A DNA stretch of 64,000 bases from Botryllus schlosseri (taxonomy: Eukaryota). Below, piece by piece: positions 4,501 to 7,500 of this stretch; positions within the stretch are counted from its first letter, which is position 1; each line of letters opens with the position of its first letter. Made by a program: the position numbers and the translations under genes. The notes beneath the pieces were generated by a model, which had not been told where the DNA came from, searched no databases, and saw nothing but the letters and a program-made list of their open reading frames with translations. The stretch lies in contig CM119376.1 in assembly GCA_051294905.1 (NCBI GenBank), positions 18,414,001 to 18,478,000 of the forward strand, read 5' to 3'.

Positions 4501-7500
4501 CGCACCAATTGCGAGATTCAAGGGAAACAGTATTGGAACTATAATTATTATGATATAACTCTTCGTGGAAATGGGTCTATAATTTCAGTACGTATTGCAT
4601 AGTACCACTGTAGCGTACAATAGAACCTTGGCCAGTATGGCGTTGAGTAGGGATGGTGTGAAAGGTTCAGGTTCGTGTGAACACGAACCTTTTTGAAGGG
4701 TTCTGTGTGTACGCGAACGTGAACCTCATGACGTCACGTGACGTCATATTGCAAATTCCAGCCCCACATTTCAGTGAAGTGATAGCCTATATTAATGTAC
4801 ACGGACCTAGCGACGACTCGGGCCACCTAATGCCACAATGCTGAAGTACATATTGACGTTTTGAACGTCGCCAAATGTATCAACTGGGGCAATCAAATGA
4901 TATAATATTACCATAAAATCAATATCTTCCGTCGCTTTGCCAACAATTTCGACGAGGACTTGCAAGGGAATATATGCTTACGCCATAACGGTATAGGCCA
5001 GACCGGGCAATGTATTTGGCGTCTGAGTATTGCTACGTTGAAATTGAGCAGGGTGTAAAACGGGTTTCTATACTTGCTACCGACATTACCCCATTAAAAA
5101 GTAATACAGCAGTAGCCAACACCTCAATCGCATGGATTTGGATTTTATGGTACGATTAACATAGAAAGTCAAGATTGATTGACCCCGTGCGCCTGCTAGA
5201 TTTTTTAGCATCACGCAACGATATCAATTTCATTGGTTGATTGAGTAAGCATCATTCGCTGGCTACCTGCATGTAGTGTATTTCACTCTTGATGTTGTGT
5301 GATTGCGAGTCAAGCTCACAACAGAGAGTCACTAAATATTCACAACGGAAAGCTGGATATTTCGAGCAAACTTTTGCAATAAAGCAGGTAAAATTTTTCA
5401 GATTGTCAAGGTCCATGCTCGATTGGAGTTGATTTTTTTGCTGCCACCCCCATGCATAGAGTGTCCCGCAGTTGAAATGCAAATAATTTCAATCAAAGAT
5501 GCTATAATGAGGTGATAAGTGTAATATATGAAAAGTTTCACAGTACAGAACCTACCAAGGTTCGTTTGTGAACGTGAACCTCTAAATTTCTGACGTTCAC
5601 ACACAGAACGTGAACGTGAACCTCACGTTCACACCATCTCCAGTTGAGAATATGTGCTGTGATGTGGAAGCAAAATGGGTAACGCATCACATATTTTCGA
5701 CGTAATTCCCAACGAAATTGGATTAAGACGGTGGTCTCGTCGAGAAAGTGCAGCAGTGGAGAAAAGTTTGTCAGAAATTTCGCAAAGGGTTAAAAGCCGA
5801 TGACGCGTGATCTCGACACCACAGAAATATATGGAGTGGAATGGTGCCACTCGCTAAAATCTTCACACTTCCAACCCTAATTTGAGACCACATGGTATTT
5901 AGAGAGCGCAGTGCCCCTTTCTCGTAATCAAAGGCGCTCGTGAGACGGGGTCATTTATGCAGATTATACTTTACGTCTGTCGGGGATGTAGCTCAGATGG
6001 TAGAGCGCGCGCTTAGCATGTGCGAGGTACCGTAAATGAATATAACCCCCCCCCCCCCCGACCCACCCTCATCACCAATCACTACCCCTCCCTCCCCCCC
6101 CCCCCCCGAACAGGAAATCCATTAGAAGAGCTTCTTGGAGGTACAGAATTTCAATATACAATTGAATGGTATATTCATGTTGGGGTGGGCCCGGGTGTTT
6201 TCGGCTGGCACTCTCGGGGGTAGTCGTCAGCAACTAGTAGCTTACGATTGCCCCTGGCGGGTGTCGGCCGGGGTGTTCGGGTTCATGTCAGTGTGGATGT
6301 ACTATTTAATTGGAAGTCAATTAGGAGAAAGGACACCCAACCATCCAGTCACCACAAAGTCTATCATTGTCAGAACCATACGGCAACATAATATGAAATA
6401 TTGAAATATGAATTGAAGTCAGGCAATAATAGAGTCACAACCAACCACCCAAAAGTGGGTAGACCTCGTTCAAACCAAAAAATTGGAAAAACCCCAAAAA
6501 CAGGAAAAGTCGATTGACACGCATCAATAGGTTTCGTCCCACAGACACCACAAACCCTGAAAATTTCCAAACATACAGCTAGCGACCACACCCACTTTTT
6601 GCTAAAGATGAACTCATCTACAAAATAGCAAACATCCTTAAACCCAAACCAGTACCGTCCCCAATAGCCGCTTGCCTATTTATTGATTGTCTATTATATA
6701 CTTCACATTTACTTTATTTGAATAAACCACTAAAAGAGGTACCGGGATCGATGCCCGGCATCTCCACTTTATGATGTTATTTCGTAAACTGATAAGTTTT
6801 CCCTTTCCACAACTGTGCTATGTGATATTTGCTAGAATTTTGTTTGTCATGTCGCGTATATTATTTCACTTCGATTTCTTTCATCTAAAATCCTGCTGTC
6901 GAGCCATACTACTGAAAATGTACGGCTTCACGTAACGCCTGGATACTTGGCAGGAATACAAACTTTCGAGATCATTTTCTAGCTTCGAATCAACGCTACC
7001 GCGAGAATGTACCTCTGAAAACATGAGGTTGATTCGAAGTCAGAAATTATCTCGAACTTATGTTCTCCTGTCAAATACGGCTCTGAACAAGTAGACAGGT
7101 CTTACGTAAAGCTCTGCATTATGATTTACATTTCCAGAAATAGCAACATCCATGCAGCAGACAATAACATCTTAAAATCGGCATGCGCAATACGAAGGTT
7201 TAGTATGAAGCGGAAGGGTTAGTAAGCTACATAAATCATAGTTTAGCCGCGCTCTTAAATTTTGACTTCGGCCTGCTTAAAAGTGATACCATAGGAGTTA
7301 TCTCGATCTTCTAGGATACTCATCGCAATATATTATACAGTGGTAAAGCTCGCCGGGAAACCTTGCTTCATAATTCATAAATATAAATGTTTTGCGTACA
7401 ACACAGGCAATATCAATAGTACGAACTATACGATGGTGATGAACTGAACATCAATTCTATACCTCTACTCCTTAACCACCCCTCTGAAGCCATTTGAGCA

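What the first reader, a model, noticed from the sequence alone, without database searches (positions are those of the whole stretch)
5982..6766. tRNA-Ala(AGC) cleanly split by a TIR-less 703-bp element: candidate tRNA-targeting mobile element
Seen: an otherwise perfect 73-nt tRNA-Ala is interrupted at the variable loop/T-stem junction, with GAGGTACCG duplicated on both sides. The duplication contains the palindrome GGTACC. The insert has no TIRs and no convincing ORF, ends in AATAAA-N4-TAAAA, and carries a short direct repeat near both ends (TGAATATAACC at ~6037, TGAATAAACC at ~6719). Known: Dada DNA transposons and some Tx1-clade retrotransposons target small-RNA genes. Inference: the intact halves and exact duplication suggest a recent, possibly sequence-specific insertion. 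It could be a 5'-truncated non-LTR element, a non-autonomous Dada- or MuDR-like element, or a recombinase product using the tRNA as an att-like core. The A and B boxes are now more than 700 bp apart, so the tRNA is probably silenced.
Basis: partly seen in the sequence, partly recalled or inferred. Interest (0 to 1): 0.82.

Follow-up and report, generated by a model that had tools for sequence, protein, structure and literature searches.

The report
Truncated LINE copy inside tRNA-Ala gene
One of about 45 alanine-tRNA gene copies in this animal genome was hit, apparently by chance, by a dead 5'-truncated piece of an ordinary LINE jumping gene, whose other copies sit at unrelated non-tRNA sites, so this is not a tRNA-targeting element.

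Summary
Window 5982-6032 plus 6745-6766 rebuild a perfect 73-nt tRNA-Ala(AGC). A 703-bp insert (6033-6735) is flanked by an exact 9-bp duplication, GAGGTACCG.

The insert is not a new kind of element. It is the last ~505 nt of the 687-nt 3'UTR of a low-copy LINE. That LINE has ORF1 with CCHC knuckles and ORF2 with an APE endonuclease and reverse transcriptase, and its nearest solved relative is human L1 ORF2p. A 191-bp copy of a very abundant short repeat with its own 8-bp duplication sits nested at 6121-6311.

Six copies in the genome share the same 3' end (...AATAAACCACTAAAA). They start at different 5' points, from ~0.5 kb to ~5.3 kb. This is the signature of target-primed reverse transcription with 5' truncation.

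None of the other five copies touches a tRNA or any Rfam RNA gene, and none of 16 further loci carrying the tail motif is followed by the tRNA-Ala sequence. All other spanning tRNA-Ala(AGC) sequences (43) are uninterrupted at this site.

A public contig from a second sample bridges the 3' junction, so the insertion is real. The gene copy is very likely dead but redundant. This is ordinary and of low interest.

The parts
5982..6032 (+). 5' part of tRNA-Ala(AGC): acceptor, D arm, anticodon arm, variable loop and first 3 nt of the T stem (51 nt)
   Evidence: ARAGORN on the rejoined sequence. Identical to other genomic copies.
6024..6032 (+). left copy of the 9-bp target-site duplication GAGGTACCG
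6033..6120 (+). LINE 3'UTR fragment, first part. Starts at the 5'-truncation point and includes two poly-C tracts. Its last 8 nt (6113-6120, GGAAATCC) are the left duplication of the nested repeat.
   Evidence: Aligns to the 3'UTR of five other copies.
6121..6311 (+). nested copy of a very abundant short repeat. Left end ATTAGAAGAGC..., right end ...CTATTTAATT, with two ~85-nt inverted arms abutting.
   Evidence: Absent from the five other LINE copies, which read straight through GGAAATCAATTAGG. About 87% identical to many genomic copies. Family ends and 8-bp duplications seen in 7 loci.
6312..6735 (+). LINE 3'UTR fragment, second part. The first 8 nt (GGAAGTCA) are the right duplication of the nested repeat. 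It ends AATAAA(6721-6726)-CCAC-TAAAA(6731-6735), the family's fixed 3' end.
   Evidence: 86.7-91.0% identical (gaps counted) to copies on C9, C11, C7, C13 and C1, all ending at the same base.
6736..6744 (+). right copy of the 9-bp target-site duplication GAGGTACCG
6736..6766 (+). 3' part of tRNA-Ala(AGC): the duplicated 9 nt, then the rest of the T arm and the acceptor 3' strand (6745-6766)
   Evidence: A public contig of a second sample runs from 6693 across this part to 7188 (record 31).

Best explanation
A 5'-truncated ('dead on arrival') copy of a low-copy LINE landed by chance in one member of a multi-copy tRNA-Ala(AGC) gene family. The LINE is an APE-endonuclease plus reverse-transcriptase element of the L1/Tx1 group. 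Inferred mechanism: the endonuclease nicked the bottom strand opposite ...GTGC|GAGG... The freed 3'-OH primed reverse transcription at the fixed 3' end of the LINE RNA (...AATAAACCACTAAAA), possibly helped by a 3-nt GAG match. Copying stopped about 505 nt in, within the 687-nt 3'UTR. A staggered top-strand cut 9 bp downstream produced the GAGGTACCG duplication. Later a 191-bp copy of an abundant short repeat inserted into the LINE fragment. The A box and B box of the tRNA are now over 700 bp apart and T-runs lie between them, so this copy is most likely not expressed as a tRNA. About 43 uninterrupted copies make the loss harmless.
For: Shown:
- Six copies share one 3' end and have different 5' extents. 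The window copy is ~0.5 kb, C11 ~0.55 kb, C9 ~2.3 kb, and C1, C7 and C13 are 5.0-5.3 kb.
- The C13 copy has a 410-aa ORF1 with CCHC knuckles and a 1095-aa ORF2. ORF2 matches Exo_endo_phos (5.6e-14) and RVT_1 (2.7e-33), with a weak zf-RVT hit.
- The nearest solved protein is human LINE-1 ORF2p at 2e-81, against R2 at 4e-22.
- The window insert is colinear with the last ~505 nt of the 687-nt 3'UTR.
- The 9/9 duplication exactly restores a canonical tRNA.
- The C11 copy also shows a duplication of at least 8 bp (GATGGATG).
- Flanks of the other five copies differ from one another and contain no tRNA or Rfam match.
- Of 17 loci with the tail motif, only the window is followed by tRNA-Ala sequence.
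- 43 spanning tRNA-Ala sequences are intact at this site.
- The 3' junction is present in a contig from an independent sample (record 31).
- The window copy has 6 private substitutions in 322 columns (1.9%). Zero changes in the 82 nt of tRNA plus duplication are therefore expected about one time in five.
Inferred: the order of the nicking and priming steps, from the known TPRT mechanism, and loss of Pol III expression.
Against: - Duplications of the long copies (C7, C13, C1, C9) could not be defined cleanly. The TSD evidence therefore rests on the window and C11.
The copy census is a lower bound, and one more near-identical ORF2 copy (C1:5.69 Mb) was not examined.
- No empty allele was found, so the pre-insertion state is inferred from paralogs only.
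- The 5' junction was not confirmed in an independent sample.
- The clade (L1 versus Tx1) was not resolved. Tx1 relatives are known to be target-specific, and other site-specific LINEs were noted in this genome by earlier scan agents.
Confidence: 0.9

Rival explanations
1. The LINE family is a tRNA-Ala-specific (Tx1/Dewa-like) retrotransposon, and this is its preferred target.
For: The ORF2 belongs to the L1/Tx1 group. Many Tx1-clade elements show target preference (PMC4494074). Three of six family copies are followed by GAG, which hints at some short-range preference. The target is a multi-copy gene.
Against: Only 1 of 6 family copies and 1 of 17 tail-bearing loci is in a tRNA. The 43 spanning tRNA-Ala sequences are unoccupied at this site. 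GAG is only a 3-nt motif.
Confidence: 0.03
2. The insert is a non-autonomous DNA transposon (Dada-like or MuDR-like), or a recombinase-mediated insertion that uses the tRNA as an att core.
For: A 9-bp duplication fits MuDR. Dada elements lack terminal inverted repeats, and one family targets tRNA-Ala in fish (PMC3706591).
Against: The whole insert apart from the nested repeat is colinear with a LINE 3'UTR downstream of an APE/RT ORF2. Copies share the 3' end only. Dada makes 6-7-bp duplications, and Dada-tA sits in the anticodon loop (PMC3706591). There are no terminal inverted repeats. No transposase or integrase ORF is present.
Confidence: 0.01
3. The structure is a template-switch chimera. 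The reverse transcriptase jumped from the LINE RNA onto a tRNA-Ala molecule, so the 5' 'half' is a retro-copied piece and not the original gene.
For: L1-type enzymes are known, from general knowledge, to make small-RNA/LINE chimeras. The 5' tRNA part abuts a truncated LINE.
Against: This would not explain a matching 3' tRNA part downstream, nor why the two parts overlap by exactly 9 nt and rebuild a perfect gene. A simple insertion with a target-site duplication needs one event.
Confidence: 0.02
4. The split is an assembly artefact that joins a LINE copy to tRNA repeats.
For: tRNA-Ala and the LINE are both repeated. Public short contigs break at the tRNA.
Against: A contig from another sample (X7, record 31) runs from the LINE 3' end through the tRNA 3' part into 420 nt of unique flank. 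The exact 9-bp duplication is the expected product of a real insertion.
Confidence: 0.02

Closest known systems
5'-truncated L1-type LINE insertions made by target-primed reverse transcription
   Same: APE endonuclease plus RT ORF2, and ORF1 with zinc knuckles. There is a fixed 3' end with an AATAAA signal, variable 5' truncation, a short target-site duplication and dispersed non-specific sites.
   Different: There is no long poly(A). Every copy ends in just ...CACTAAAA, and the same tail occurs in LINE families whose ORF2 is only 57-60% identical. This suggests recognition of a specific 3' end rather than of poly(A). The copy number is very low (6-7).
Tx1-clade target-specific LINEs (Keno in U2 snRNA genes, Mutsu in 5S rRNA genes, Dewa in tRNA-Leu spacers)
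   Same: An APE-type LINE of the L1/Tx1 group found in a multi-copy small-RNA gene (PMC4494074, PMC3706591).
   Different: Those families have most copies at one target position. Here only one copy of at least six is in a tRNA.
Dada DNA transposons (Dada-tA in tRNA-Ala genes of fish)
   Same: No terminal inverted repeats, and an insertion inside a tRNA-Ala gene.
   Different: Dada encodes a DDE transposase, makes 6-7-bp duplications, and Dada-tA sits at the anticodon loop (PMC3706591). The window insert is a LINE 3'UTR with a 9-bp duplication at the variable loop / T stem.

Membership tests
APE-type LINE (L1/Tx1 group), 5'-truncated copy | Full-length relatives encode an APE endonuclease and a reverse transcriptase in ORF2 | tested here: met
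   Pfam Exo_endo_phos 5.6e-14 and RVT_1 2.7e-33 on the 1095-aa ORF2 of the C13 copy. Human L1 ORF2p matches at 2e-81.
APE-type LINE (L1/Tx1 group), 5'-truncated copy | Copies share one 3' end and differ in their 5' extent | tested here: met
   Six copies all end ...CACTAAAA. Lengths run from ~0.5 to ~5.3 kb.
APE-type LINE (L1/Tx1 group), 5'-truncated copy | Target-site duplication of variable sequence flanking each copy | tested here: inconclusive
   Clear for the window (9 bp, exact) and C11 (at least 8 bp). Not definable for C7, C13, C1 and C9.
APE-type LINE (L1/Tx1 group), 5'-truncated copy | Clade assignment (L1 versus Tx1) by an RT phylogeny with reference elements | not testable with these tools
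   No Repbase or reference clade sequences were available. Only proximity to human L1 in the PDB could be shown.
Target-specific LINE (Tx1-like, tRNA-targeting) | Most copies are inserted at the same position of the same target gene | tested here: not met
   Five of six copies have no tRNA or Rfam gene in their flanks. Sixteen of 17 tail-bearing loci have non-tRNA flanks. 43 spanning tRNA-Ala sequences are unoccupied at this site.
Dada DNA transposon | DDE transposase in autonomous copies; 6-7-bp TSD; family-specific RNA-gene target | tested here: not met
   Longer copies encode APE/RT and not a transposase. The TSD is 9 bp. There is a single tRNA hit. Criteria are from PMC3706591.
MuDR/MULE non-autonomous element | Terminal inverted repeats with a 9-11-bp TSD | tested here: not met
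   The 9-bp TSD is present, but the termini carry no inverted repeats and the copies differ at their 5' ends.

The most novel reading that the evidence does not exclude
The LINE family may have a weak integration bias. It could prime through a 3-nt GAG match next to its fixed non-poly(A) tail, or favour open, Pol III-transcribed DNA. Either would make tRNA-Ala variable loops (…GC|GAGGTA…) slightly favoured targets. In addition, the tail AATAAAYCACTAAAA, shared by LINE families only 57-60% identical in ORF2, would be a conserved recognition signal for their reverse transcriptases.
Probability: 0.1. Interest if true: 0.3.

Novelty: already known. Interest (0 to 1): 0.12.

Why it matters
It matters little. 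The finding documents one chance knockout of a redundant tRNA gene copy by a dead LINE fragment in a tunicate-like animal genome, and it removes a false lead for a tRNA-targeting element. The reusable points are minor. There is a low-copy L1/Tx1-group LINE family with a fixed non-poly(A) tail that diverged relatives share. There is also an abundant short repeat whose 8-bp duplication is always followed by ATTA.

Tried and rejected
- **Empty allele:** I laid Logan contigs of four public runs on 5400-7400. A 'joint' from 6023 to 6736 appears in three runs, but its shorter side is only 31-36 nt, which is the length of the tRNA part itself. It therefore comes from the other intact tRNA-Ala genes and is not an empty allele.
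- **Paralogous empty site:** both flanks are unique, apart from an unrelated 140-bp repeat at 5500-5640 and the tRNA itself.
- **RNA genes in the window:** Rfam at gathering threshold found nothing, which is expected because the tRNA is split.
- **Too-perfect tRNA halves:** I suspected the halves were too well kept for the age of the insert, which would point to gene conversion or selection. BLAST identity of ~90% suggested this. Counting only substitutions private to the window copy gives 1.9%, so zero changes in 82 nt is unremarkable. I dropped the idea.
- **Nested repeat as a tRNA derivative:** a 30-nt, 70% similarity between the tRNA/LINE junction and the left end of the nested repeat (D1) was judged to be the chance extension of a 7-mer seed.
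- **More copies from the genome:** I did not try another route.
- **LINE clade:** I could not assign it. The homology search returned almost no named relatives.

Full report
**Observation**

ARAGORN finds no tRNA anywhere in the 64-kb window. Joining 5982-6032 to 6745-6766 gives a 73-nt tRNA-Ala(AGC) with a normal cloverleaf. GAGGTACCG stands at 6024-6032 and again at 6736-6744. The insert between them is 6033-6735, 703 bp. It has no terminal inverted repeats and only short ORFs of at most 89 aa, all with non-ATG starts. It ends AATAAA-CCAC-TAAAA.

**What the insert is**

A search of the window's own 495-Mb assembly showed that the 703 bp is composite. Positions 1-97 and 280-703 match five other loci, on C9, C11, C7, C13 and C1. 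Identity there is 86.7-91.0% with gaps counted and 92-95% counting substitutions only. The middle matches a very abundant short repeat.

Aligning the six loci shows that all end at the same base (...GAATAAACCACTAAAA) and diverge immediately after it. Upstream the other copies run on beyond the window copy's first base. C11 stops about 50 nt further up (~0.55 kb in all). C9 is ~2.3 kb. C1, C7 and C13 run for 5.0-5.3 kb.

The C13 copy carries a 410-aa ORF1 and a 1095-aa ORF2.
- ORF2 has an APE-type endonuclease domain (5.6e-14), a reverse transcriptase domain (2.7e-33) and a weak zf-RVT match.
- ORF1 has CCHC knuckles.
- The nearest solved protein is human LINE-1 ORF2p at 2e-81, against R2 proteins at 4e-22.
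- The closest database relative is only 55% identical, and almost none of the hits are named.

The window insert is therefore the last ~505 nt of this LINE's 687-nt 3'UTR. It is a 5'-truncated copy made by target-primed reverse transcription, and the 9-bp duplication is its target-site duplication. The C11 copy also has a duplication of at least 8 bp. Those of the long copies could not be defined.

**The nested repeat**

Where the other five copies read GGAAATCAATTAGG, the window has GGAAATCC, then 191 bp (6121-6311), then GGAAGTCA-ATTAGG. The 191 bp belongs to a family with more than 1,600 first-look candidates. The family's ends are ATTAGAAGAGC... and ...CTATTTAATT. In seven loci it has 8-bp duplications, each followed by ATTA. 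This second insertion came after the LINE copy arrived, so the LINE insertion is not brand new.

**Is it tRNA-targeted?**

No.
- The flanks of the other five copies are unrelated to each other. They contain no tRNA and no Rfam match at E ≤ 0.01.
- A 236-nt 3' probe finds only these six copies.
- A pattern search for the tail (AATAAAYCACTAAAA plus 20 flank bases) finds 17 loci, against 6 matches to the reversed-pattern control. Only the window is followed by tRNA-Ala sequence.
- The genome holds 46 matches to the tRNA-Ala(AGC) 5' part. They include a 150-bp-period tandem array on C10 and a cluster on C6.
- 43 sequences span the insertion site uninterrupted. The only other oddities are a 2-bp indel copy and array members with a 21-bp internal duplication.

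Three of the six family copies are followed by GAG, and a fourth by GAA. This may reflect a 3-nt priming match or a nick preference. It is the only hint of any site bias, and it is far too short to define a tRNA target.

**Is it real, and how old?**

Contigs of four public runs were laid on 5400-7400. A contig from a different sample (X7, record 31) runs from 6693 in the LINE, through the duplication and the tRNA 3' part, to 7188 in unique flank. The 3' junction is therefore not an assembly artefact.

The apparent joint from 6023 to 6736 has only 31-36 nt on its shorter side. It comes from the other intact tRNA genes and not from an empty allele. No paralogous empty site exists.

The window copy has 6 private substitutions in 322 columns where the other five agree, or 1.9%. 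At that rate, zero changes in the 82 nt of tRNA plus duplication occur about one time in five. The perfect halves need no special explanation.

**Consequence for the tRNA (inferred)**

The A box and B box are now more than 700 bp apart. T-runs of four or more lie between them at 6198 and 6596. This copy is therefore very probably not made into a tRNA. With about 43 uninterrupted copies, the loss is harmless.

**Comparison with known systems**

- **Dada transposons.** They do target tRNA-Ala genes in fish. They encode a DDE transposase, make 6-7-bp duplications, and Dada-tA sits in the anticodon loop (PMC3706591). None of this fits.
- **Tx1-clade LINEs.** They include target-specific families: Keno in U2 snRNA genes, Mutsu in 5S rRNA genes and Dewa in tRNA-Leu spacers (PMC4494074, PMC3706591). 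The present family belongs to the wider L1/Tx1 group but does not show the defining concentration of copies at one site. I could not assign it to L1 or to Tx1.
- **Earlier scan notes.** They describe this genome as sea-squirt-like, report other site-specific Tx1-type LINEs in it, and place a neurexin gene in this window. I did not test any of these.

**Limits**

The census is therefore a lower bound. One further copy with a 99% identical ORF2 (C1:5.69 Mb) was not examined. The 5' junction was not confirmed in a second sample.

**Verdict**

This is an ordinary chance insertion of a dead LINE fragment into a redundant tRNA gene. It is a known kind of event and of low interest.

Noticed in passing
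window 6121-6311, and loci L008-L030: A very abundant short repeat (more than 1,600 first-look candidates) has left end ATTAGAAGAGCTTCTTGGAGGTACAG and right end CTATTTAATT. It has ~85-nt inverted arms, and the left arm is subterminal. In 7 loci the 8-bp flanking duplication is always followed by ATTA. Either the duplication is really 12 bp ending in ATTA, or the element strongly prefers that target. The superfamily was not determined; an 8-bp TSD would suggest hAT-like.
   Followed up: partly
window 5500-5640: A second high-copy repeat (~1,400 candidates, 90-94% identical) of ~140 bp is rich in GTGAACG/CGTTCAC hairpins. It lies 340 bp upstream of the tRNA and is unrelated in sequence to the nested repeat.
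   Followed up: partly
G000 C10:15354582-15358022 (loci L051-L064, L068-L070): A tandem array of about 24 tRNA-Ala(AGC) genes has a 150-bp period. It includes 171-bp units in which 21 bp of the variable loop and T arm are duplicated inside the tRNA. A second dispersed cluster of about 12 copies lies at C6:27.63-27.72 Mb.
   Followed up: partly
G000 C1:15668213(-), C1:40720332(-), C10:11910561(-), C11:6429610(+): The 15-16-nt LINE tail AATAAAYCACTAAAA also ends LINE families whose ORF2 is only 57-60% identical to this one. Three loci share the same 20 nt after the tail (CAGGCATAGTTCGCTCTTTC). That sister family either has a longer 3' end or sits in a repeated target.
   Followed up: no
G000 C13:17263779-17267063(-), C1:5694840-5698124(-): Two loci carry open 1095-aa ORF2 frames that are 99% identical to each other. 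More than 2,500 first-look candidates of related LINE ORF2s (42-64% aa identity) exist, and many have no internal stops. LINEs of this group therefore look recently active in this genome. This is a description only.
   Followed up: no
L033 (C13), L031 (C7): 5' ends of the long copies: The 5' ends of the C7 and C13 copies both carry GTCTGA..ACGCGCACGTGCGG. The C13 3' flank (GAGTCTGATCAC) resembles its own 5' junction (TAGTCTGAACAC). This could be a microhomology-mediated 5' join or coincidence.
   Followed up: no
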